Virus record (IMG/VR): IMGVR_UViG_3300023174_000040
Location: 186,001-250,000 of that record
DNA: 64,000 nt
Direction: 5' to 3' (one strand)
Below the pieces are notes generated by a model. It worked only from the letters and a program-made list of their open reading frames with translations, made no database searches and had not been told where the DNA came from. Position 1 is the stretch's first letter; each line of letters opens with the position of its first letter. Positions 1-8,500 of the stretch are shown here, in pieces. The translations under genes were made by a program, and so were the position numbers.

Positions 1-168
1 GGTATCCAGGAGTCTATTGCTGAAAAATTGGGTGATACACCAAAAACTTCGAGTTCTCTTTCCATAGAGGCTTTTCAACTAATGAAAGATATTGCTCCTT
101 ATTTGAAAAACTATACCAAAGAATGCATCGATGAGGCATTTTATGTAATGTCTCACTGGAATCAGTAG
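1..168 (+). CDS. 3' end of a hypothetical protein (partial at window edge)
   Basis: Open frame from position 1 (GIQESIAEKLG...MSHWNQ) to TAG at 166-168; translated by hand. Confidence 0.55.
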   Translation, partial: GIQESIAEKLGDTPKTSSSLSIEAFQLMKDIAPYLKNYTKECIDEAFYVMSHWNQ

Positions 169-193
169 AATATTTTCTTTGTATTTAATATTT

Positions 194-288
194 CGGAGGC
201 TGACGCTGGTTATGTGAGGAAATTAAAAGGGAAATTAAAACCTTCCCTTTTAATTTCCATTCGAGAGAAATATCTTTTCGGTTTTTTT
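194..288 (+). repeat. Copy 1 of a conserved intergenic element, with a 16-bp perfect inverted repeat
   Basis: CGGAGGCTGACGCTGGT, then an IR (GGAAATTAAAAGGGAA 218-233 / TTCCCTTTTAATTTCC 243-258), then ATTCGAGAGAA-N-TTTTCG. Homologous to 1345-1423. Confidence 0.75.
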
Positions 289-303
289 GAATGACTGGTC
301 TTA

Positions 304-339
304 GCCAGTGTAGCTCAGTTGGTAGAGTAGCAGTTTTAT
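304..339 (+). pseudogene. Truncated tRNA 5' half (acceptor 5' strand, D arm and anticodon 5' stem only)
   Basis: GCCAGTG-TA-GCTC-AGTTGGTA-GAGT-A-GCAGT-TTT is a canonical tRNA 5' half. It stops in the anticodon loop; no T arm or 3' acceptor strand follows. Confidence 0.7.
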
Positions 340-411
340 TGCCCGGTAGCTCAAAGATAGAGCGGCTGACTTTGGATCAGCGGGTTGCAGGTTTGAATCC
401 TGCCCGGGCAT
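340..411 (+). tRNA. trnQ: tRNA-Gln(UUG), CCA not encoded
   Basis: Cloverleaf: TGCCCGG/CCGGGCA acceptor, GCTC/GAGC D stem, GCTGA/TCAGC anticodon stem with loop CT-TTG-GA, GCAGG/CCTGC T stem with loop TTTGAAT. Followed by TCT, not CCA. Confidence 0.9.
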
Positions 412-413
412 CT

Positions 414-1274
414 TTAATTTTTTGGTTTGGTCCAACCCAATGATGATTTAATTTTTCCTCTTAAAAGAAGCATAATATTTCCTCTGTTTAAATTATTGTC
501 TCGGCAGAATTTATTTAAATTTTTTATTTTAATTAAATTTCCATTTGGATCAATTATACTAAATTCTTTAGCATATTTCTCAGCTAATTTTTTGTGCCCT
601 TTTGCCCTACCTTCCTTGTTTCTTGGGTTATTTTGATCGTGTATTCCATTTTTATTTTCATGAGCTTTTTTGCCGCCAATTTTTCCACCATTTGCTCCGA
701 TTTTTTTGTAGTATTGATAGATGTCTGATTCGTTTAATCTATCCAATCTTTTTAAAATTCCTCTTCTTTGTATTGATTTTCTTTCCTCGTTTGACATTTT
801 GCCCAATCCAGCCGCATATGCTCTCTTGGCATTTTCACGTAGCTGTTCTTTTGTCATTGAAAACAATCCTTTTTTTAAAGTCTTGCATTTCATTCCAATT
901 TCCCTAAGAGTTTCAATATCACAAGTCGGAGAAAATCTACTTCCATTCAGGCAACCTTCTTTGCCATAATGTTCTTCTGTTAGTTTATTTTCAAAATCAG
1001 AACATTTTATTTCGTCGCAAAACAAGCATATTATCTCTTTTATTATTTTGTTGTTTTTTTCTATTTGTTCTAAAAATACTTTTCTGTTAACTTTGGGGCT
1101 TCCAATATATTTGTCACTTAAAATATCCCCTTTAAACTTTCTTTTTCCGTAATAATACGGAACAACTCCATTCTCTATTGCATCTGGGAAACTTGTTTTA
1201 TATATGTAAAAATTACCTTCTACTTCCTTGTAAGATAATTTTATTTCTACATTACTGTAAAAAATTCTTTTCAT
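414..1274 (-). CDS. Free-standing GIY-YIG (T4 Seg-like) homing endonuclease with C-terminal NUMOD1/IENR1-like DNA-binding domain
   Basis: FYIYKT...YYYGKRK...DKYIGS motif; C-terminal IIDPNG...NLNKFCRDNNLNRGNI...KSSLGW. Probable start is ATG 1274 (MKRIFY), not 1481 as in the ORF track. Confidence 0.8.
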   Translation of the reverse strand: MKRIFYSNVEIKLSYKEVEGNFYIYKTSFPDAIENGVVPYYYGKRKFKGDILSDKYIGSPKVNRKVFLEQIEKNNKIIKEIICLFCDEIKCSDFENKLTEEHYGKEGCLNGSRFSPTCDIETLREIGMKCKTLKKGLFSMTKEQLRENAKRAYAAGLGKMSNEERKSIQRRGILKRLDRLNESDIYQYYKKIGANGGKIGGKKAHENKNGIHDQNNPRNKEGRAKGHKKLAEKYAKEFSIIDPNGNLIKIKNLNKFCRDNNLNRGNIMLLLRGKIKSSLGWTKPKN

Positions 1275-1344
1275 AATTATATAATAGTTATTAAAATCCA
1301 ATCCCACTCTTTTTTTATCTTTAATCTTTGCTATAATATGTTCT

Positions 1345-1423
1345 CGGAGGCTGATGCTAGTGATCTGTATTGAGAAATTAAAATCTTCATTTTTAATTTC
1401 CGTTCGAGAGAATAACGTTTTCG
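1345..1423 (+). repeat. Copy 2 of the conserved element, with a 10-bp inverted repeat
   Basis: CGGAGGCTGATGCTAGT...GAAATTAAAA(1374-1383)/TTTTAATTTC(1391-1400)CGTTCGAGAGAATAACGTTTTCG; preceded by TATAAT at 1332-1337. Confidence 0.75.
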
Positions 1424-1448
1424 CCATGGAGGGCGATGAGGGCAATTT

Positions 1449-1631
1449 ATGCTTAACCTCGAAAAAATTAGTGATTTTCATTATAAAAGCTTTTACGGAT
1501 ACTTTTTATTTAAAAAGAATGAATCTAGCTGGGTGTTCATTCCTTTTGAAAAAGAATTTAACACCGAAGAGTTGATGGAAGTATTTGGTATCTTAAAGAG
1601 TCTTGATAATCAAAAATTTTCAAATAGTTGA
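1449..1631 (+). CDS. Small hypothetical protein (60 aa)
   Basis: ORF with upstream GAGGG; fills the gap between opposite-strand genes. Confidence 0.55.
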   Translation: MLNLEKISDFHYKSFYGYFLFKKNESSWVFIPFEKEFNTEELMEVFGILKSLDNQKFSNS

Positions 1632-2276
1632 TTCTTTATTTCCGTTCGAAGATAAGACCTTTTCGCCGGTGTTTTTGATGTCGTAGTAAAAAGAATCGGT
1701 GTCTTCTGTTGTCCACCGGTCTGCATTCTCACAAACGAATATTTGTTTATCCACTTTATATTTAGGAATATTGTCGATCTTTAATGGGTTATTAATAAAG
1801 TTGCTATCTCTCCATAGTATTCTATTGTTTGGCTGAAGAGCAAAGTGTCCATTATCAAGTTTGATTAGGTGTGCATTTTTATAATCTTGGGGAGTATCGC
1901 TATAAGAGTTATTTTCCCAATCAAAGGTCATCATGTATGTTCCCCATACTAATGATTTATCTTTTAATATAACTTCACATCTTTTATTAACAAGATAAGT
2001 GAATACTATAACATTTATTTCATTTCCAAAGCAATCCCATAATTCTAATAAATCAAGTCTATATCCTGGGTGGTCTTTTTTATGAACAAGAGCACTTATT
2101 GGAACGTTGGCTCTTTGAGCACCGTTCTCTAACATTATGTGAAATGTTAATGCTCTTGCTGCTGTGCTTCTTGCTGCGAAAACAAGACAATATTCATATT
2201 CATCAAATCCTGATTGATATTCAAAAAGATGTTCTTTTTTTACAAAACAATAAAACGGGTTTATATTAACGTTCAT
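1620..2276 (-). CDS. Conserved phage hypothetical protein
   Basis: 218-aa ORF. The NPFYCFVKKEHL...FHIMLENGA...WDCF...ALQPNNRILW pattern resembles a family I recall from aquatic phages; function unknown. Confidence 0.7.
   Translation of the reverse strand: MNVNINPFYCFVKKEHLFEYQSGFDEYEYCLVFAARSTAARALTFHIMLENGAQRANVPISALVHKKDHPGYRLDLLELWDCFGNEINVIVFTYLVNKRCEVILKDKSLVWGTYMMTFDWENNSYSDTPQDYKNAHLIKLDNGHFALQPNNRILWRDSNFINNPLKIDNIPKYKVDKQIFVCENADRWTTEDTDSFYYDIKNTGEKVLSSNGNKESTI
1635..1665 (+). repeat. Copy 3 (core only) of the conserved element
   Basis: TTTATTTCCGTTCGA-N10-TTTTCG, inside the 3' end of the minus-strand ORF 1620..2276. Confidence 0.6.
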
Positions 2277-2763
2277 GGGTAACTTCTGGGTGATTCTCTA
2301 TTAACCAATTATTAAATGATTCCACTGCTCTTCCAAAGTCTGGACTTGATTTTACTCCTGATGGCAATTGCGGGAGCTGTCTTTTTGTTGGATCAAACTT
2401 ATTAGTGGGAGCTTTAGTTGCTTTTACCTTGCCCCCTATTATTTGAGCTTTTCCCCTTGAAACAACTACATCTTTTCCATTTACTTTTTGCGTACTTGTT
2501 TTCATGGGAACTTTTTTAGCCATATCCAACATTTCTGCTTTTTCGTCTTCAATATCTTGTTCTTCATCTGTGAGTTTGGAAGCTACGGGTTTTTTAATGG
2601 GAGGAGCTGCACTTGCTTTATTTGATATTCCCAAACCTATTCCTGCGAGACTTCCTGCTACCAATGCGCTCCTTAGTAGTTTATTCTTTCCTAATGAGTC
2701 TAAGATTCCTTCGTCTATTATCTCTGGGTGTTTTTCTATTAGCCATTCATTAAATGTTTTCAT
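2266..2763 (-). CDS. Putative internal virion protein (CTS-like N-terminus plus hydrophobic segment)
   Basis: Starts MKTFNEWLIEKHPE; a similar motif ESFNNWLIENHPE recurs at the C-terminus. Confidence 0.7.
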   Translation of the reverse strand: MKTFNEWLIEKHPEIIDEGILDSLGKNKLLRSALVAGSLAGIGLGISNKASAAPPIKKPVASKLTDEEQDIEDEKAEMLDMAKKVPMKTSTQKVNGKDVVVSRGKAQIIGGKVKATKAPTNKFDPTKRQLPQLPSGVKSSPDFGRAVESFNNWLIENHPEVTHER

Positions 2764-2766
2764 GTT

Positions 2767-3060
2767 TTATATTTCTATTTGATATTCTGGATCTTTGACC
2801 ATGCTGTTGTATTTATTAACAAAGAGCTTCAAGTCTTCTTCTGCGTCGTGTTCACTATTAGTGTGACTGTTAAATATTTTTCTCCACTTTGGAACTAATT
2901 GCTTTACATCTTTTTTTAGATCTTCTAATCCTTGTGGGTCGTTTTCTTTGCACCATTCAATTTGCTCCAACACATACATGGCTTCCCCGTATGCTTCATC
3001 TTCTGCCCAACCATCATTGTTATTTTCTTTAATTTCTAACCATTCATTAAATGTTTTCAT
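2767..3060 (-). CDS. Putative internal virion protein (CTS-like N-terminus)
   Basis: Starts MKTFNEWLEIKE; acidic, 97 aa. Confidence 0.7.
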   Translation of the reverse strand: MKTFNEWLEIKENNNDGWAEDEAYGEAMYVLEQIEWCKENDPQGLEDLKKDVKQLVPKWRKIFNSHTNSEHDAEEDLKLFVNKYNSMVKDPEYQIEI

Positions 3061-3088
3061 GTTTTTATATATGAATCAAATAGTTAGA

Positions 3089-3121
3089 TTTTAATTTCCA
3101 TTCGAAAGACAAAAGTTTTCG
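3089..3121 (+). repeat. Copy 4 (core only) of the conserved element
   Basis: TTTTAATTTCCATTCGA-N10-TTTTCG followed by a T-rich run. Confidence 0.65.
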
Positions 3122-3134
3122 GTTTTTGTTTTTC

Positions 3135-3163
3135 TTGACTTTTTCTCTATTTTTTATTATTAT
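3135..3163 (+). promoter_or_regulatory. Sigma70-type promoter
   Basis: TTGACT-N17-TATTAT upstream of GAGG and ATG 3187. Confidence 0.65.
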
Positions 3164-3186
3164 GGTTTCTTAACCTGAGGTATTTT

Positions 3187-3393
3187 ATGGAAATTAAAAC
3201 AAGTAAAGAAATAGTTTTATCGGCGGAAGATGTTGAAAACTTAATTATTAAAGGTTTATATCACTCTCAAGGTCTTAGTGGAATATTTAATATAAAGTTT
3301 AAGATTGCTAGAGAGCTCTCTGAAAAAGAGGGAGATTATAATTTTGTTTTCGATGGAGCCGAGGTAAAAATTAGTGAAAATATAAGAGTCTAG
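3187..3393 (+). CDS. Hypothetical protein (68 aa)
   Basis: ORF with promoter and SD-like GAGG. Confidence 0.65.
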   Translation: MEIKTSKEIVLSAEDVENLIIKGLYHSQGLSGIFNIKFKIARELSEKEGDYNFVFDGAEVKISENIRV

Positions 3394-3409
3394 TAATATA
3401 TAAATTACT

Positions 3410-3775
3410 ATGAAAACATTTAATGAATGGCTCTCCGGTAAGTTAGAAGAAAATCAAAGTGCTGATGGGTTTAGTTTTAAAAATCATCCCATAGCAACTC
3501 AGCAAATTGCTTCGACAGTTGTTAGTCTAGTTCCAATTGATTTTGAACATAGTCCGAGCTACGGAGAGAGAAGTTCTGATTTTGGGTTATTAATCAAGAA
3601 TCAGCATGGTGAGGCTAAAGCTTATCTGAGTCCAAACAAAAGCGTTGCCATGAATTACTACAATGAATTCATATCAGTCTTTAATCATTTAGTCACTCAA
3701 AGTAGTGAGAATGAGGTCGTTATTATGCAACCTCATACACTAGATAAATTACTTGCCCACATTGGCGTTAGATAG
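3410..3775 (+). CDS. Putative internal virion protein (CTS-like N-terminus)
   Basis: Starts MKTFNEWLSGKLEE. Confidence 0.7.
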   Translation: MKTFNEWLSGKLEENQSADGFSFKNHPIATQQIASTVVSLVPIDFEHSPSYGERSSDFGLLIKNQHGEAKAYLSPNKSVAMNYYNEFISVFNHLVTQSSENEVVIMQPHTLDKLLAHIGVR

Positions 3776-4773: not shown

Positions 4774-4924
4774 AAATAATATTTGTCTCATATTTATTGT
4801 AATAATTATTTTTTGGAATATCTCTTCGAATAATCTTTGTTTCCTTGGGCGTGAAAACAGAATCAAGAATCAAAGATAGAACGCCCAAAACAAATAATGA
4901 TAGAATTATAACTAAAACAATCAT
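4754..4924 (-). CDS. Small membrane-anchored protein (56 aa, not in ORF track)
   Basis: MIVLVIILSLFVLGVLSLILDSVFTPKETKIIRRD...DDDL*; N-terminal TM helix. Confidence 0.55.
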   Translation of the reverse strand: MIVLVIILSLFVLGVLSLILDSVFTPKETKIIRRDIPKNNYYNKYETNIIFTDDDL

Positions 4925-5005
4925 TATAATTTTCTCTTTTCTGGTTCTTTGACTCTGGGTCCGTTTGTCAAGGGATATGATTTTACTTTATTCATAGTTA
5001 ACCTT

Positions 5006-5431
5006 TCAGTTTGAGCCTAATATAAAAACTACCATACCAATTACAACTAGTAAAGTTCCAATAGTTGAAATTAAAGATAATTGAAATTGTCCTGTTGCTA
5101 AAAACGCAAATAAAATACAAAATAAAGGATAAGAGATTTCAATTATACTTGCGTGTGTAGCGCTTTTACTTTGTATTGCGTTTATGCAAAGATAGTTACC
5201 TGCTATAGCACTGACAAAGGCCAATATCATCCAAGATATCGACCTGGGAGTAAAGTCGCAATCTATTTTAGTTTTACTGGTCAATAACCAGATCATCCAA
5301 AAAATACAATTAGCGGTGCCGCTTAAAGCTAAATACATTTTTCGGTCTATGCTTTTAAGCACCACTTCGGTGGAACTGTAGGATAGAGCCCAACAAACGG
5401 CGGTAAGTAATGCTGTGATATACCAAGGCAT
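5006..5431 (-). CDS. EamA/DMT-family membrane transporter (single repeat)
   Basis: 141 aa with about five TM helices; ALLTAVCWA...AIQ...ASIIEISYPLF...GTLLVVIG matches the EamA pattern. Confidence 0.75.
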   Translation of the reverse strand: MPWYITALLTAVCWALSYSSTEVVLKSIDRKMYLALSGTANCIFWMIWLLTSKTKIDCDFTPRSISWMILAFVSAIAGNYLCINAIQSKSATHASIIEISYPLFCILFAFLATGQFQLSLISTIGTLLVVIGMVVFILGSN

Positions 5432-5501
5432 AATATTATATTAGTAAAAAGAGACCTAGTGTAGTATATATTTTTATACTAAAATAATTTAGGAGAAATT
5501 A

Positions 5502-8500
5502 ATGCAAACATACACCAGCAATCTTACCTCAATTCCATCTTGGCTCGCAGAATATGGTAATCAAACCGGGAAAACCATAGGTCTCAATTTTGGTTTCAAT
5601 TCCGATGGCATGTTTTTTATTGGAAATGCTGGGGATGAGAGCCCAGCTTATAGCGTAAGAACCAATTTCAACATATCTGAGCATCAGGCTTGCGAGGTGA
5701 TATTTACCGCTGATCACACTAATTTTTGCTCAGATCAAGGCATATGTTTTTACAATGATGGGCAATCTCCCAACTGGCATTGGGATCCAGATCCTTCAAG
5801 AATAGCGTTTCAAATAAATTGTCCAGTTCCACATATTTACGGCACAAACAAGTTTGTAAACAATTCTGGCGAGTATTATGGGAGTTGGGAGCCGGGCAGA
5901 GACGGCTCCGATGTTCTAGAAAGTGGCATCTATACATTTAAGGTAACATACGACCCAGCCGCCAGAACTGTTACCGCCATCACATATGAGGGAGAGAATA
6001 CTTCAGGAACCATGGTGGACACCATTGTTTTGCATGAGAAGTTGATGGATGGTGGACCATACCGAATTGGATTTGATGCCGATAGTGACGGCAGCCTTGA
6101 GCCAGGAGACCCTCCTGGCAATTCCCCTGCGTATTTCAAGAACCTCACGATAAATGTCTATGAAACAAATGGGATATCGGACGACACAGAGTTGAACAAT
6201 CAACTCAATAATCTCAAGACAGAATACGCCCAAGTCACAGATCTTGTGGAAGACCTATACCGTTTCTCAGACGATGCGGACATAGACATGGGAGAAGGCT
6301 CGCCAACAGGAGATGGAACAGACTACAATTTTAGTGAATTGGGATTTGGTAGTGAAATATGCATCCAAGACGATGGCAAAATTGTAGTCGCTGGATATTC
6401 TGGAACTAATGATTATTCAAAAAATATCAGAAGAATAGATGTTTATGGCAAAGAAGATGAATCGTTCACACCGCCAGTTTTCAATGGCCCATTAAGTAGC
6501 GTTGTTCAGATGAGTGACGGAAGGTTGGTTGTGGGCGGTTTTTTTAATAGTCTTGAAAGATTTGATGGACTATCCAACGGCACATCAATATCACAACCAA
6601 GCTGGGATCCCGATATCATATTAGATAATCAAGTCATTATCGGAGGAATGGTTTGCTTAAATCCGGACGGATCAATAAGCAAGAGAGATGGCGGAGATAT
6701 TGGCTTTGAAGATAGAGCCATAAGTGGTATTCCCATTCAAGTTTACACCATAAAATTACTGGACGATAACAGCGTTCTGGTAGGGGGGCATTTTACTCAT
6801 TATGACGATGTGGAATCCCCTTATTTGGCAAAAATAGATAGCGATGGAGTTATAGATGAAGTTTTTGCCGCCAATATTTTAGGCTTGGGATTGCTCCCGG
6901 GAGGTGGCATAAGTTTGAGCGATTCTGTATCCGCAATTGCTGTTGATGATAGTGGGAAAATACTAATTGGGGGCGGATTTGATAAAAGCATCATCAGGCT
7001 TAATGGCGATGGATCACTGGACAGTTCGTTCGATTCCGGGGACGGCTTCACCGGCCAGATGGTGAATGGGGTTTTTGCAATACTTCCATTATCAAGCGGA
7101 AAGATATTGGTTGGACATTCTGGCACAGATTATGACGGGTCTAGTTGTAACCGTGGGTTGGTAAGATTGAACAGTGACGGATCTTTGGACAACACATACG
7201 CCCCAGACCTCTACGAGTCTGAGGGCTTTGGATTTGTAGTTGCCATTGCCCAACAAGAAAATGGAAAGTTGCTTGTAGGCGGAGCCTTTGACATTTTAGA
7301 GGGAGGCAGTCTAAACAAAATAGTCCGATTGAACACTGACGGTTCTATGGATGAAAGTTTCAACAACGGTTTTGGATTTACTTCTGCGGGTTATAATTGG
7401 CCACCACAAACAAATGACATTAAGCTAGACTCGACTGGCAACATATATGTTGCAGGGAACTTCACTGACTACAACCATGCCGCAAGGTTCCAGTATGCAA
7501 AATTGGACACAAATGGGGCACTTCAAGAGTGGAGCGTTCTGCCTGCTTTCAAGCAGATGGGAATAAATGACGGCACGAACGATATGTATGACGGAGCAAA
7601 TTTTTTAAATACAAATCTCACCCAACCTTATCTTGATATAAAGTGCTATGCCAACGATAATCCTGAGGATATCGAGATCAGTGGTGGCTTAGGAGGATGT
7701 ATTTGTCCGCCTTCGTACATCTGTGGCGAGGACTGTTGTGGACCTAGATTTAGCAAGAGTGTCCCCTCCACTCATACTCAAGCATGGGATGAAGACCCAG
7801 AAGAAGACTTCTATGATCCAGCATTAGATCAATATCGATATCTTCCTATTTGTGATAGCCATGTTATGGTTGGAGATGGATATTTCGGAGATGGAAGCAG
7901 CTATTTCACAGCCATGTTTCCCGGAATGTTCGTCCTTGCGGCAAACAACATCAATATCACACAGTTCTCAATAGTTGGAAACATAGGGACAGACGGTGAT
8001 GGTGTTGATGCAGTTGACATCTATCCGATCAATGTTGGTGGATTGACTTACACTGCGTATTTTAAGACTAATTATGGCGACGGTGATCCCTCCATAAACC
8101 ACATCATAATCGTTGATGGCAATGGAGATGGAATCGATCAGTTTTACGATCCAACTTCTAGGGGTGACGAGCATTGTATCACCGGGCTTGAGGGCAAGAC
8201 AAAGCTCTTCTTTCTTTGTTTGAGTAAAGCAGATGCAGTAGCAATGACACCCTCAGAGGCAAAAGACGTTGCAACTAAATTTTTGGATGTTATAGGCTTA
8301 ATCTCTGTTTGCGATCCAATAACGACCACATATGAACTAGATTTGAGTCCGGACCATCCAGAATTATTATCTAATTATAATTACGATGGAGAAGGCAATA
8401 TGGACACTGCCATAATAATCGATCCGGTTAATGGGAAACGTAGATCTATACAGAGAACCTCTTACTTGGAACTCACTGATAATTGCGGAAACAAAAAGGT

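What the first reader, a model, noticed from the sequence alone, without database searches (positions are those of the whole stretch)
194..3121. Four-copy conserved element with fixed spacing and RNA-like hairpin variation
Seen: the core TTT(A/T)ATTTCCRTTCGA-N10-TTTTCG occurs at about 247, 1391, 1635 and 3089, with the spacer exactly 10 nt each time. The CGA...TTTTCG part can pair, and A/G variation opposite T fits A-U/G-U exchange on the + strand. Copies 1 and 2 also share CGGAGGCTGAYGCTRGT and an upstream GAAATTAAAA/TTTTAATTTC hairpin. Copy 2 starts about 7 nt after a TATAAT. Copies 1 and 2 form direct repeats bracketing the tRNA plus endonuclease cassette, and copies 1 and 4 end in T runs. 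Inference: an unannotated structured RNA leader or attenuator, a protein-binding operator or phage promoter, or a recombination scar of the mobile cassette.
Basis: partly seen in the sequence, partly recalled or inferred. Interest (0 to 1): 0.6.

Follow-up and report, generated by a model that had tools for sequence, protein, structure and literature searches.

The report
Repeated phage gene-cassette boundary element
A roughly 50-base sequence repeated four times in 3 kb of a large freshwater phage genome marks the borders of small gene cassettes. Related phages have swapped, duplicated and deleted genes at this sequence; it most likely also forms a small RNA hairpin, but that role is not proven.

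Summary
The motif occurs four times on the + strand (window 249-280, 1392-1423, 1634-1665, 3090-3121), against zero expected by chance. There are no other copies in the 323-kb virus record. The repeat unit is about 50 nt. It is conserved in at least seven related freshwater phage contigs, including ones whose neighbouring protein is only 50-62% identical.

Every copy sits at a cassette boundary: after a stop codon or a promoter-leader, and before a tRNA gene, a ribosome-binding site plus ORF, a convergent gene end or a sigma-70 promoter. The 5' and 3' flank types re-assort freely between genomes. Copy 4 still carries the last codons of the ORF that precedes copy 3. So the element is a recombination joint, as in the PeSL modules of T4-like phages.

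It is extended by an outer helix in several subtypes. Covariation and folding z-scores are not significant. No Rfam family matches, and no read data could be obtained.

Best reading (confidence about 0.4): a modular intergenic RNA stem-loop that acts as a leaky terminator when a U-tail follows it and as an intercistronic hairpin when none does. Its repetition drives cassette shuffling. Rival readings are a phage-specific promoter, a nut/put-like antitermination site, and a DNA-binding site. GIY-YIG identity of the endonuclease is not confirmed.

The parts
193..216 (+). Leader box (TCGGAGGCTGAYGCTRG...), copy 1. It follows a degenerate -10-like TATTTA/TTTAAT.
   Evidence: Direct repeat D3 with 1344-1367, 83% identical. 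The same box occurs in G002, L090 and L097.
218..258 (+). Upstream hairpin of copy 1: perfect 16-bp arms with a 9-nt loop. Its 3' arm is the first half of the conserved core.
   Evidence: Inverted repeat I12, 100% complementary.
231..280 (+). Element copy 1 (core 249-280). Flank type b-i: promoter-leader on the 5' side; T-run, GAATGA and tRNA genes on the 3' side.
   Evidence: Orthologues lie before tRNA-Thr in L008, G002, L029, L090, L092 and L097.
257..294 (+). Long hairpin of the tRNA-leading subtype: CCATTCGAGAGA (257-268) pairs with the T-run plus GAATGA (282-294).
   Evidence: MFE -9 kcal/mol. 95% of cells pair across 7 genomes, and one pair reads AU:3, GU:3, GC:1. Arm-flank duplex energy is -10 to -16 against -5 +/- 2 for random 30-mers.
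297..339 (+). Truncated 5' part of a tRNA-Thr-like gene.
   Evidence: Compared with the intact tRNA-Thr(CGT) of L029 at 2007-2080 and with L020. ARAGORN and Rfam call no gene here.
340..412 (+). tRNA-Gln (UUG).
   Evidence: ARAGORN; Rfam RF00005, 65.3 bits.
414..1274 (-). Homing-endonuclease-like ORF. The start at 1274 is inferred; the open frame runs to 1481.
   Evidence: Residues 231-283 match PHROG 2081 'HNH endonuclease', E = 1.9e-11. No Pfam hit. Unrelated endonuclease genes sit in the same slot in L008 and L097.
1329..1337 (+). Extended -10 promoter element TGCTATAAT, 7 nt before the leader box of copy 2.
   Evidence: Read directly from the sequence. Conserved in L008, L057, L097 and G002.
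1344..1367 (+). Leader box, copy 2.
   Evidence: D3.
1374..1423 (+). Element copy 2 (core 1392-1423). Flank type b-ii: promoter-leader on the 5' side; CGCC..GGCG hairpin (1422-1435), ribosome-binding site and the ATG at 1449 on the 3' side.
   Evidence: The outer helix plus small hairpin folds at -8.5 kcal/mol.
1449..1631 (+). Small 60-aa ORF flanked by copies 2 and 3. It is conserved next to the element in L008, L057, G002, L094, L097 and L098.
   Evidence: No family match.
1616..1665 (+). Element copy 3 (core 1634-1665). Flank type c-iii. It begins at the stop codon of the small ORF and lies inside the last ~14 codons of the convergent gene 1620-2276(-).
   Evidence: The PHROG 3704 match of that gene ends at residue 204 of 218.
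3072..3121 (+). Element copy 4 (core 3090-3121). Flank type c(remnant)-iv. Its 5' edge repeats the last codons of the small ORF (TCAAATAGTT).
   Evidence: Compared with copy 3.
3104..3134 (+). 12-bp A/U hairpin of copy 4, with the TTTTCGG box as its loop.
   Evidence: MFE -9.2 kcal/mol, z = -2.16, only 4 of 200 shuffles fold as well; the minus strand gives -4.8, z = -0.31.
3135..3163 (+). Sigma-70-type promoter TTGACT-17-TATTAT for the + gene at 3187, directly abutting copy 4.
   Evidence: Promoter scan, 10 of 12 matches.

Best explanation
The element is a modular intergenic boundary unit of about 50 nt, belonging to a small clade of large freshwater tailed phages.

Inferred mechanism: it is transcribed on the + strand within host-RNA-polymerase (sigma-70) transcripts. 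There it folds into a small stem-loop (CGANAG / 7-nt A-rich loop / UUUUCG). The conserved UUUCC box and a GG-containing 3' flank can add an outer helix. What follows the hairpin sets its effect. With a U-rich tail (before tRNA-Thr, at the convergent junction, before the sigma-70 promoter) it acts as a weak, leaky terminator or 3'-end hairpin. Without a tail (16-30 nt before a + strand start codon) it is an intercistronic hairpin that would protect or delimit the upstream message.

Shown by comparison: the same 30-50 nt stands in direct orientation at every border. Recombination between copies has therefore swapped, duplicated and deleted the cassettes between them. In this window, copies 1 and 2 flank the cassette of tRNA, endonuclease and promoter-leader. 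Copies 3 and 4 flank three minus-strand genes.
For: (1) The element is real and local: four copies and no others in 323 kb.

(2) It is deeply conserved. The core is intact next to homologues of the upstream 411-aa protein that are only 62% (L090) and 50% (L092) identical.

(3) The flanks re-assort. Three 5' types exist: a (stop codon of the upstream gene), b (promoter plus leader) and c (end of the small ORF). They combine with 3' types i (T-run, GAAYGG, tRNA-Thr), ii (CGCC hairpin, ribosome-binding site, ATG), iii, iv, v and vi. The combinations a-i, a-ii, b-i and b-ii all occur (raw sequences).

(4) Copy 4 keeps the last ~10 nt of the ORF that precedes copy 3.

(5) Similarity between genomes starts and stops at the element's edges: L020 has a different upstream gene, and L008 and L097 carry different endonucleases.

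(6) The small hairpin is in the minimum-energy fold of most of the 23 distinct copies. The outer helix extends it to -6 to -14.6 kcal/mol in types ii, iii, v and vi.

(7) L098 has TTTTCG changed to CTTTCG, which turns a G.U pair into G-C.

(8) T-rich tails follow types i, iii and iv (6-8 T in the best 8-nt window, but only 4-5 in the iii copies of G002 and L097) but not type ii (1-3 T); type v, which also precedes an ORF, has 4.

(9) The folds work only on the + strand because of their G.U pairs.

(10) PeSL precedent: composite stem-loop/promoter modules at indel junctions in T4-like phages (PMC4122927; PMC2839356).
Against: There is no statistically significant covariation for either hairpin. 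Two G002 copies carry a T that makes a U.U mismatch in the small stem.

Folding z-scores are -0.1 to -0.8 for copies 1-3. The terminator scan calls none of the copies. The genome's other terminators are GC-rich hairpins, so the stems here are unusually weak.

The near-invariance of TTTAATTTCC and TTTTCG is stronger than a hairpin alone requires. TTTTCG is part of a stem in one fold and part of a loop in others. That pattern suggests sequence-specific recognition by a protein or polymerase.

A terminator directly upstream of tRNA genes, and 50 nt downstream of a promoter, is awkward. Copy 4 and the second L090 copy have no + strand gene immediately upstream.

Confidence: 0.4

Rival explanations
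1. The element is a promoter for a phage-modified or phage-encoded RNA polymerase, of a middle-mode type. The 16-nt box would occupy about -34 to -19, a weak -10-like nAnnTT would overlap the start of TTTTCG, and transcription would start a few bases after TTTTCG.
For: In L008, L020, L029, L092, G002 copy A and L094 the element is the only conserved non-coding sequence between an upstream stop codon and a tRNA gene or an ORF with a ribosome-binding site. Position 8 of the spacer is A in all 23 copies and TT follows in 22 (CT in one L098 copy), so the geometry fits a sigma-70-family promoter. The record's tRNA-Lys, -Ser and -Glu genes are each directly preceded by a different promoter-like motif. 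Copy 4 would then form a tandem pair with a sigma-70 promoter.
Against: Copy-3-type elements in W, L057, L008, G002 and L097, and the second L090 copy, point straight into the 3' ends of convergent genes. Type b copies already have a sigma-70 promoter 50 nt upstream. There are only 3-4 copies per genome. No sigma region 2, T7-like RNA polymerase or beta subunit was found in the record, which is 64% complete. The sigma-70 consensus scan did not call any copy.
Confidence: 0.17
2. The element is a cis-acting RNA that modifies the transcribing polymerase (nut- or put-like processive antitermination) or recruits a processing factor. The single-stranded U-rich box would play the part of boxA and the A-rich-loop hairpin that of boxB.
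For: Its positions mirror lambda nutL and nutR (from my own knowledge of lambda): one kind of copy sits in the leader about 50 nt after a sigma-70 start, another right after a stop codon. All copies are on the strand of the dominant early transcription. A conserved single-stranded box is followed by a short stem with a purine/A-rich 7-nt loop. Several copies contain CTTTAA or TTCTTTA, which resembles boxA. Copies are few and confined to one operon-like region.
Against: No N-like arginine-rich protein was identified; the small ORF after copy 2 is acidic and hydrophobic. The resemblance to boxA is recalled from memory and is weak. There is no covariation and no Rfam hit.
Confidence: 0.15
3. The element is a double-stranded DNA site for a sequence-specific protein: a regulator, a replication or packaging factor, or a nuclease such as the neighbouring 411-aa protein. 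The hairpin potential would then be incidental.
For: Two boxes (the 16-mer and TTTTCG) are nearly invariant at a fixed 10-bp spacing, whatever the local gene orientation or predicted fold. The TTTCCG and TTTTCG half-boxes lie 21 bp apart, which is two helical turns. The copies cluster in about 3 kb, in one orientation. The 411-aa upstream gene is linked to the element in every genome where that gene is found.
Against: The position relative to sigma-70 promoters is inconsistent: about +47 to +78 for copy 2 and about -80 to -49 for copy 4. There is no tandem iteron array and no clear GC-skew turning point at the locus. The 411-aa protein has no family match. The spacer is also conserved and purine-rich, which a bipartite DNA site would not require.
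Confidence: 0.18
4. The copies are neutral leftovers of duplications made when cassettes were inserted, and have no function of their own.
For: Direct repeats bracket the inserted cassettes. L098 tolerates a copy-2-type element that lacks 6 nt of the core.
Against: The core is unchanged between genomes whose adjacent protein has diverged to 50-62% identity, while the flanks and the outer parts of the unit have diverged. Two subfamilies (TAAAAYCTTC-type and ATAGTT-type 5' halves) both keep the same core across lineages.
Confidence: 0.1

Closest known systems
PeSL / PmSL modules of T4-like phages (promoter-early stem-loops; Arbiol et al. 2010, PMC2839356; Comeau et al. 2014, PMC4122927)
   Same: Both are short conserved intergenic units containing a stem-loop, in direct orientation at the borders of small accessory genes in a plastic region. 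Insertions, deletions and replacements between close relatives have their breakpoints in or beside the unit. Copy 4 has the full PeSL layout: stem-loop, sigma-70 promoter, ribosome-binding site, ATG. Homing endonuclease genes lie nearby.
   Different: Only 3-4 copies per genome, against dozens of PeSLs. The conserved part here is a 16-nt box plus TTTTCG, not the promoter. Three of the four window copies have no promoter downstream of the hairpin, and in copies 1 and 2 the promoter lies upstream. The stems are weak and rich in A-U and G.U pairs. The phage is a much larger one, not shown to be T4-like. This same genome has a separate, more PeSL-like composite: a GC hairpin followed by the GTTTCTTTTTGGTACGGT motif, in about 50 copies.
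Intergenic RNase III processing hairpins of the phage T7 early and late transcripts (from my own knowledge)
   Same: Both are a family of similar hairpins with an internal loop, all in one orientation. They lie between a stop codon and the next ribosome-binding site in a polycistronic transcript, and would leave a protective 3' hairpin on the upstream message.
   Different: T7 sites have about 20 bp of helix. Here the outer and inner helices together give only 9-14 bp. No cleavage data exist.
Lambda nut sites and HK022 put sites (from my own knowledge)
   Same: Both are few in number and lie in a promoter-proximal leader or just after a stop codon. Both pair a conserved single-stranded box with a short hairpin that has a purine-rich loop.
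   Different: There is no sequence match to boxA or boxB, no N-like protein, no demonstrated terminators that need to be overridden, and no covariation.
REP/BIME-type bacterial intergenic repeats (from my own knowledge)
   Same: Both are repeated extragenic hairpins after stop codons that can stabilise upstream mRNA and serve as recombination substrates.
   Different: REPs are palindromic, numerous and found in both orientations. This element is asymmetric, rare and found in one orientation only.

Membership tests
PeSL (promoter-early stem-loop) | Stem-loop immediately upstream of a sigma-70-like early promoter | tested here: inconclusive
   Met for copy 4 only: hairpin 3104-3134, then TTGACT-17-TATTAT at 3135-3163. 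Copies 1-3 have no such promoter downstream.
PeSL (promoter-early stem-loop) | Located at insertion, deletion or replacement junctions between closely related phages | tested here: met
   Flank types re-assort and breakpoints lie at the element's edges.
PeSL (promoter-early stem-loop) | Many copies spread through the hyperplastic regions of a T4-like genome | tested here: not met
   Four copies in 323 kb, all within 3 kb. Three copies found in G002 (65.6-kb fragment, 14% complete) and four convincing copies in G001. T4-like affiliation was not examined.
Canonical intrinsic (Rho-independent) terminator | GC-rich stem of at least 5 bp followed directly by a U-tract | tested here: not met
   The consensus scan calls none of the four copies. 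The small stem has two G-C pairs plus A-U and G.U pairs and folds at -2 to -4 kcal/mol in types i and iv. U-tracts are present after copies 1, 3 and 4.
Any Rfam 15 RNA family | Covariance-model score at or near the gathering threshold | tested here: not met
   Only tRNA is found at gathering thresholds. At E <= 5 on 150-3250 only chance-level hits appear, far below threshold.
Conserved structured RNA (general criterion) | Compensatory base changes that support the helices | tested here: inconclusive
   Small hairpin: 97.6% of cells pair, but with zero covariation; one G.U to G-C change in L098 and one U.U mismatch in G002. Long hairpin of type i: one pair reads AU/GU/GC, and 275 of 500 shuffles do as well.
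Lambda-type nut site | BoxA consensus, boxB hairpin and a cognate N-like protein | not tested
   The resemblance is only of layout. No boxA or boxB model was available and no N-like ORF was recognised.
Replication-origin iterons | Closely spaced tandem repeats in an AT-rich origin near replication genes, with a strand-skew switch | tested here: not met
   The start-to-start spacings are 1143, 242 and 1456 nt. Cumulative GC skew only flattens near 185 kb and has no clear extremum.
GIY-YIG homing endonuclease (the neighbouring ORF 414-1274) | GIY-YIG catalytic domain | tested here: not met
   No Pfam match at E <= 1. Only a C-terminal match to PHROG 2081 'HNH endonuclease'.

The most novel reading that the evidence does not exclude
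The element is a new, clade-specific cis-acting RNA signal of large freshwater phages. A conserved single-stranded box plus an A-rich-loop hairpin would reprogramme the host polymerase (processive antitermination, nut/put-like) or direct processing of an early polycistronic transcript that includes tRNAs. Its sequence conservation would then reflect recognition by a dedicated phage or host factor.
Probability: 0.15. Interest if true: 0.6.

Novelty: new variant of a known kind. Interest (0 to 1): 0.35.

Why it matters
The finding gives a concrete, sequence-defined example outside the T4 group of how large phages shuffle accessory genes, tRNA genes and homing endonucleases at short conserved intergenic joints. 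It also marks a place where a small, untested regulatory signal sits in front of phage tRNA genes. If the RNA role holds up, it adds a phage RNA motif that is absent from Rfam. If not, it is still a useful marker for cassette boundaries when annotating related metagenomic phage genomes.

Tried and rejected
- **Hammerhead reading of the leader (CTGAYG...):** rejected. The A9 position is C, and Rfam finds nothing.
- **T-arm or tRNA mimicry of CCRTTCGA:** rejected. No conserved partner strand was seen when reading.
- **My first covariation idea (R = A with a GGT flank, R = G with a GCC flank):** refuted by L008 copy 1 and L057 copy 4, which combine G with GGT.
- **Leader peptide from the ATG in the leader box:** the ATG is ACG in copy 1 and in G002, and the frames are not conserved.
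- **Long purine/T-run hairpin as a universal feature:** it is specific to type i, copy 4 and one L008 copy. It is absent from types ii, iii and v.
- **The T-run plus GAAYGG of type i as a diverged copy of the abundant GGTACGG motif:** the profile search gives no match.
- **Origin of replication:** the GC skew is not informative.
- **Phage sigma factor or RNA polymerase to go with a promoter reading:** none found in the 64%-complete record; only weak helix-turn-helix hits.
- **Homing-endonuclease target site:** unlikely, because endonuclease-bearing genomes keep intact copies on both sides.
- **More relatives:** two further viral-contig patterns added none. Most of the 64 metagenome hits are chance matches in unrelated GC-rich DNA.
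- **Literature search for the motif string:** only unrelated primers.
- **Read evidence:** I did not try to get it another way, and read laying was not used.

Full report
**1. Observation.** The pattern TTTWATTTCCRTTCGA-N10-TTTTCG matches window 249-280, 1392-1423, 1634-1665 (one mismatch) and 3090-3121. All four are on the + strand, and none is expected in 100 dinucleotide shuffles. The repeat finder widens the unit to 50 nt at 60-84% identity.

The window is positions 186001-250000 of a 323,267-bp IMG/VR virus record with 35.8% G+C, which CheckV rates 64% complete. A mismatch-tolerant scan, looser regular expressions and an nhmmer profile built from 13 copies find only these four copies in the record. 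Pfam hits on large ORFs in the window (a baseplate spike OB domain, an SNF2 helicase, methyl- and glycosyl-transferases) indicate a large tailed phage.

- The shared leader box is at 193-216 and 1344-1367.
- The upstream hairpin exists, and in copy 1 it is a perfect 16-bp inverted repeat.
- An extended -10 (TGCTATAAT, 1329-1337) lies 7 nt before the leader box of copy 2.
- T-runs follow copies 1 and 4.
- tRNA-Gln is at 340-412.

The 'GIY-YIG' label is not confirmed. ORF 414-1274(-) has no Pfam hit, and only its C-terminal 50 residues match a PHROG annotated as HNH endonuclease.

**2. Relatives.** Pattern scans of the viral and metagenome collections, plus look-ups through two neighbouring proteins, found the element in the following contigs:
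- G001 (L008, 251 kb): four copies in the same order.
- G002 (L009/L011, 65.6 kb): three copies.
- L020, L029 and L057.
- L090/L091, where the upstream 411-aa protein is 62% identical: two copies.
- L092/L093, where that protein is 50% identical.
- L094-L096, L097 and L098.

All other hits are unrelated, mostly GC-rich DNA, at about the number expected by chance. This gives 23 distinct copies. The core is essentially unchanged across this divergence, while the outer 5' part of the unit and both flanks differ. That argues for constraint on the core and against a neutral scar.

**3. Context.** Every copy lies at a border between units. The flank types are:

| Side | Type | What lies there |
|---|---|---|
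| 5' | a | Stop codon of the upstream gene; the TAA is often the first bases of the unit |
| 5' | b | Sigma-70 promoter plus the TCGGAGGCYGAYG leader |
| 5' | c | Last codons of the conserved 60-aa ORF |
| 3' | i | T-run plus GAAYGG, then tRNA-Thr |
| 3' | ii | CGCC..GGCG hairpin, ribosome-binding site, ATG |
| 3' | iii | 3' end of a convergent gene |
| 3' | iv | Sigma-70 promoter |
| 3' | v | A + strand ORF 16 nt away |
| 3' | vi | Between two minus-strand genes |

The combinations a-i, a-ii, b-i and b-ii all exist in different genomes. Further points on context:
- G002 shows what looks like the simplest layout: gene X, copy A, lipoprotein-like ORF, promoter-leader, copy B, tRNA-Thr, tRNA-Gln, small ORF, copy C.
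- In the window, an endonuclease gene and a second promoter-leader-element lie between tRNA-Gln and the small ORF. Three minus-strand genes lie between copies 3 and 4.
- Copy 4 still carries the TCAAATAGTT end of the small ORF.
- L020 has a different gene upstream of an otherwise identical copy 1.
- L008 and L097 have different endonuclease genes in the same slot.
- L098 has lost the endonuclease, the promoter-leader and 6 nt of the core through a TTTAATT microhomology.

These are the signatures of recombination within or at the edge of a short repeated sequence. The same behaviour is described for PeSL modules of T4-like phages (PMC4122927).

**4. Structure.** It shows no covariation, because the 3' strand never varies. 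Two G002 copies carry a T that gives a U.U mismatch. One L098 copy changes the first T of TTTTCG to C, which turns a G.U pair into G-C.

Folded with 10 nt of 3' flank, the small hairpin is in the minimum-energy structure of most copies. In types ii, iii, v and vi it is extended by an outer helix between the conserved UUUCC box and a GG-containing flank, at -6 to -14.6 kcal/mol.

In the tRNA-leading type a competing long hairpin forms between CCRUUCGAGAGA and the U-run plus GAAYGG. It pairs in 95% of cells, and one pair reads A-U, G.U or G-C in different genomes. The shuffle control is not significant. Its arm-flank complementarity is far better than with random 30-mers (-10 to -16 against -5 +/- 2 kcal/mol), but this holds only for type i, copy 4 and one L008 copy.

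Single-sequence z-scores are weak (-0.8, -0.6 and -0.1), except for copy 4 (-2.16). Minus-strand folds are worse. Rfam has no matching family. The RNA hairpin is therefore plausible and strand-specific, but not demonstrated.

**5. Function.** T-rich tails follow the hairpin in types i, iii and iv. They are absent in type ii, which is followed within about 25 nt by a + strand start codon; type v, also followed by an ORF, has an intermediate 4 T. That fits one hairpin module used either as a weak terminator or 3'-end hairpin, or as an intercistronic hairpin.

Several things argue against a simple terminator:
- The stems are much weaker than the GC-rich terminator hairpins elsewhere in this genome.
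- tRNA genes lie directly downstream of type i.
- Type b copies sit 50 nt after a promoter.
- The two boxes are more invariant than a fold requires.

The rivals are therefore kept. A phage-specific promoter would explain the tRNA genes and ORFs that lack any other promoter, but it fails for the copies that face convergent genes. The other two rivals are a nut/put-like RNA signal and a double-stranded DNA-binding site. No sigma factor or phage RNA polymerase was found in the incomplete record. GC skew does not point to an origin.

**6. Comparison and novelty.** In behaviour the element is closest to PeSL modules, and copy 4 has the complete PeSL layout. It fails the defining points of promoter content (three of the four copies) and of copy number. 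I therefore class it as working like a PeSL, not as a member of that family. It is a new variant of a known kind: a clade-specific cassette-boundary element with a conserved bipartite core.

**7. Verdict.**
- Interest is 0.35.
- The most novel reading that survives is a new cis-acting RNA signal for antitermination or processing, with probability about 0.15.

Noticed in passing
G000 33.6-184.3 kb (upstream of the window); one minus-strand copy at about window 31095: A second, far more abundant intergenic motif, consensus about GTTTCTTTTTGGTACGGT. It has roughly 50 copies, nearly all on the + strand, often right after a GC-rich terminator hairpin. It lies 25-60 nt before start codons and 0-12 nt before tRNA-Lys, tRNA-Ser and tRNA-Glu. 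The invariant core is GGTACGG, and the motif is also present in the relatives L020, L008 and L090. It looks like a phage-specific promoter, possibly initiating at the GG, or a processing signal. The series ends about 0.7 kb before the gene that precedes copy 1.
   Followed up: partly
L008 5581-5773 (minus strand); G000 about 118.9 kb: The relative G001 has a group I intron (Rfam RF00028, 68.6 bits) inside a tRNA gene, between copy 1 and its endonuclease gene. The anticodon-loop context reads CTTCAAA. The window's own record has intron-like sequence just upstream of an odd 'tRNA-???' call at 118976.
   Followed up: partly
G000 113483-113842: The phage record encodes a tmRNA (tag GTVNYAMAA) directly after a tRNA-Leu gene. 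Eight tRNA or tmRNA genes are found in all.
   Followed up: no
window 2740-2768, 3037-3065, 3398-3432: Three neighbouring small genes share an almost identical first 23-29 nt (97-100%), and all begin MKTFNEWL. They are the minus-strand genes starting at 2763 and 3060 and the plus-strand gene starting at 3410. The rest of each gene differs. This may be a second kind of recombination linker, or a conserved N-terminal signal.
   Followed up: no
window 297-339: A truncated 5' part of a tRNA-Thr-like gene lies between copy 1 and tRNA-Gln. The gene is intact in L029 and L090.
   Followed up: partly
window 414-1274; L008 about 4870-5520; L097 820-1389: Three different endonuclease-type genes, all on the minus strand, occupy the same slot between the tRNA genes and the promoter-leader-copy 2 unit in three related phages. 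G002 and L098 have none there.
   Followed up: partly
G000 169-179 kb: A run of small ORFs (76-122 aa) with weak helix-turn-helix matches to sigma-70 region 4_2, E = 0.001-0.1. They lie in the tRNA-rich, motif-rich block upstream of the window.
   Followed up: no
window 1354-1575: A 73-aa ORF starts at the ATG inside the leader box of copy 2, runs through the element and overlaps the 60-aa ORF in another frame. The ATG is not conserved (it is ACG in copy 1 and in G002), so the ORF is probably spurious.
   Followed up: yes
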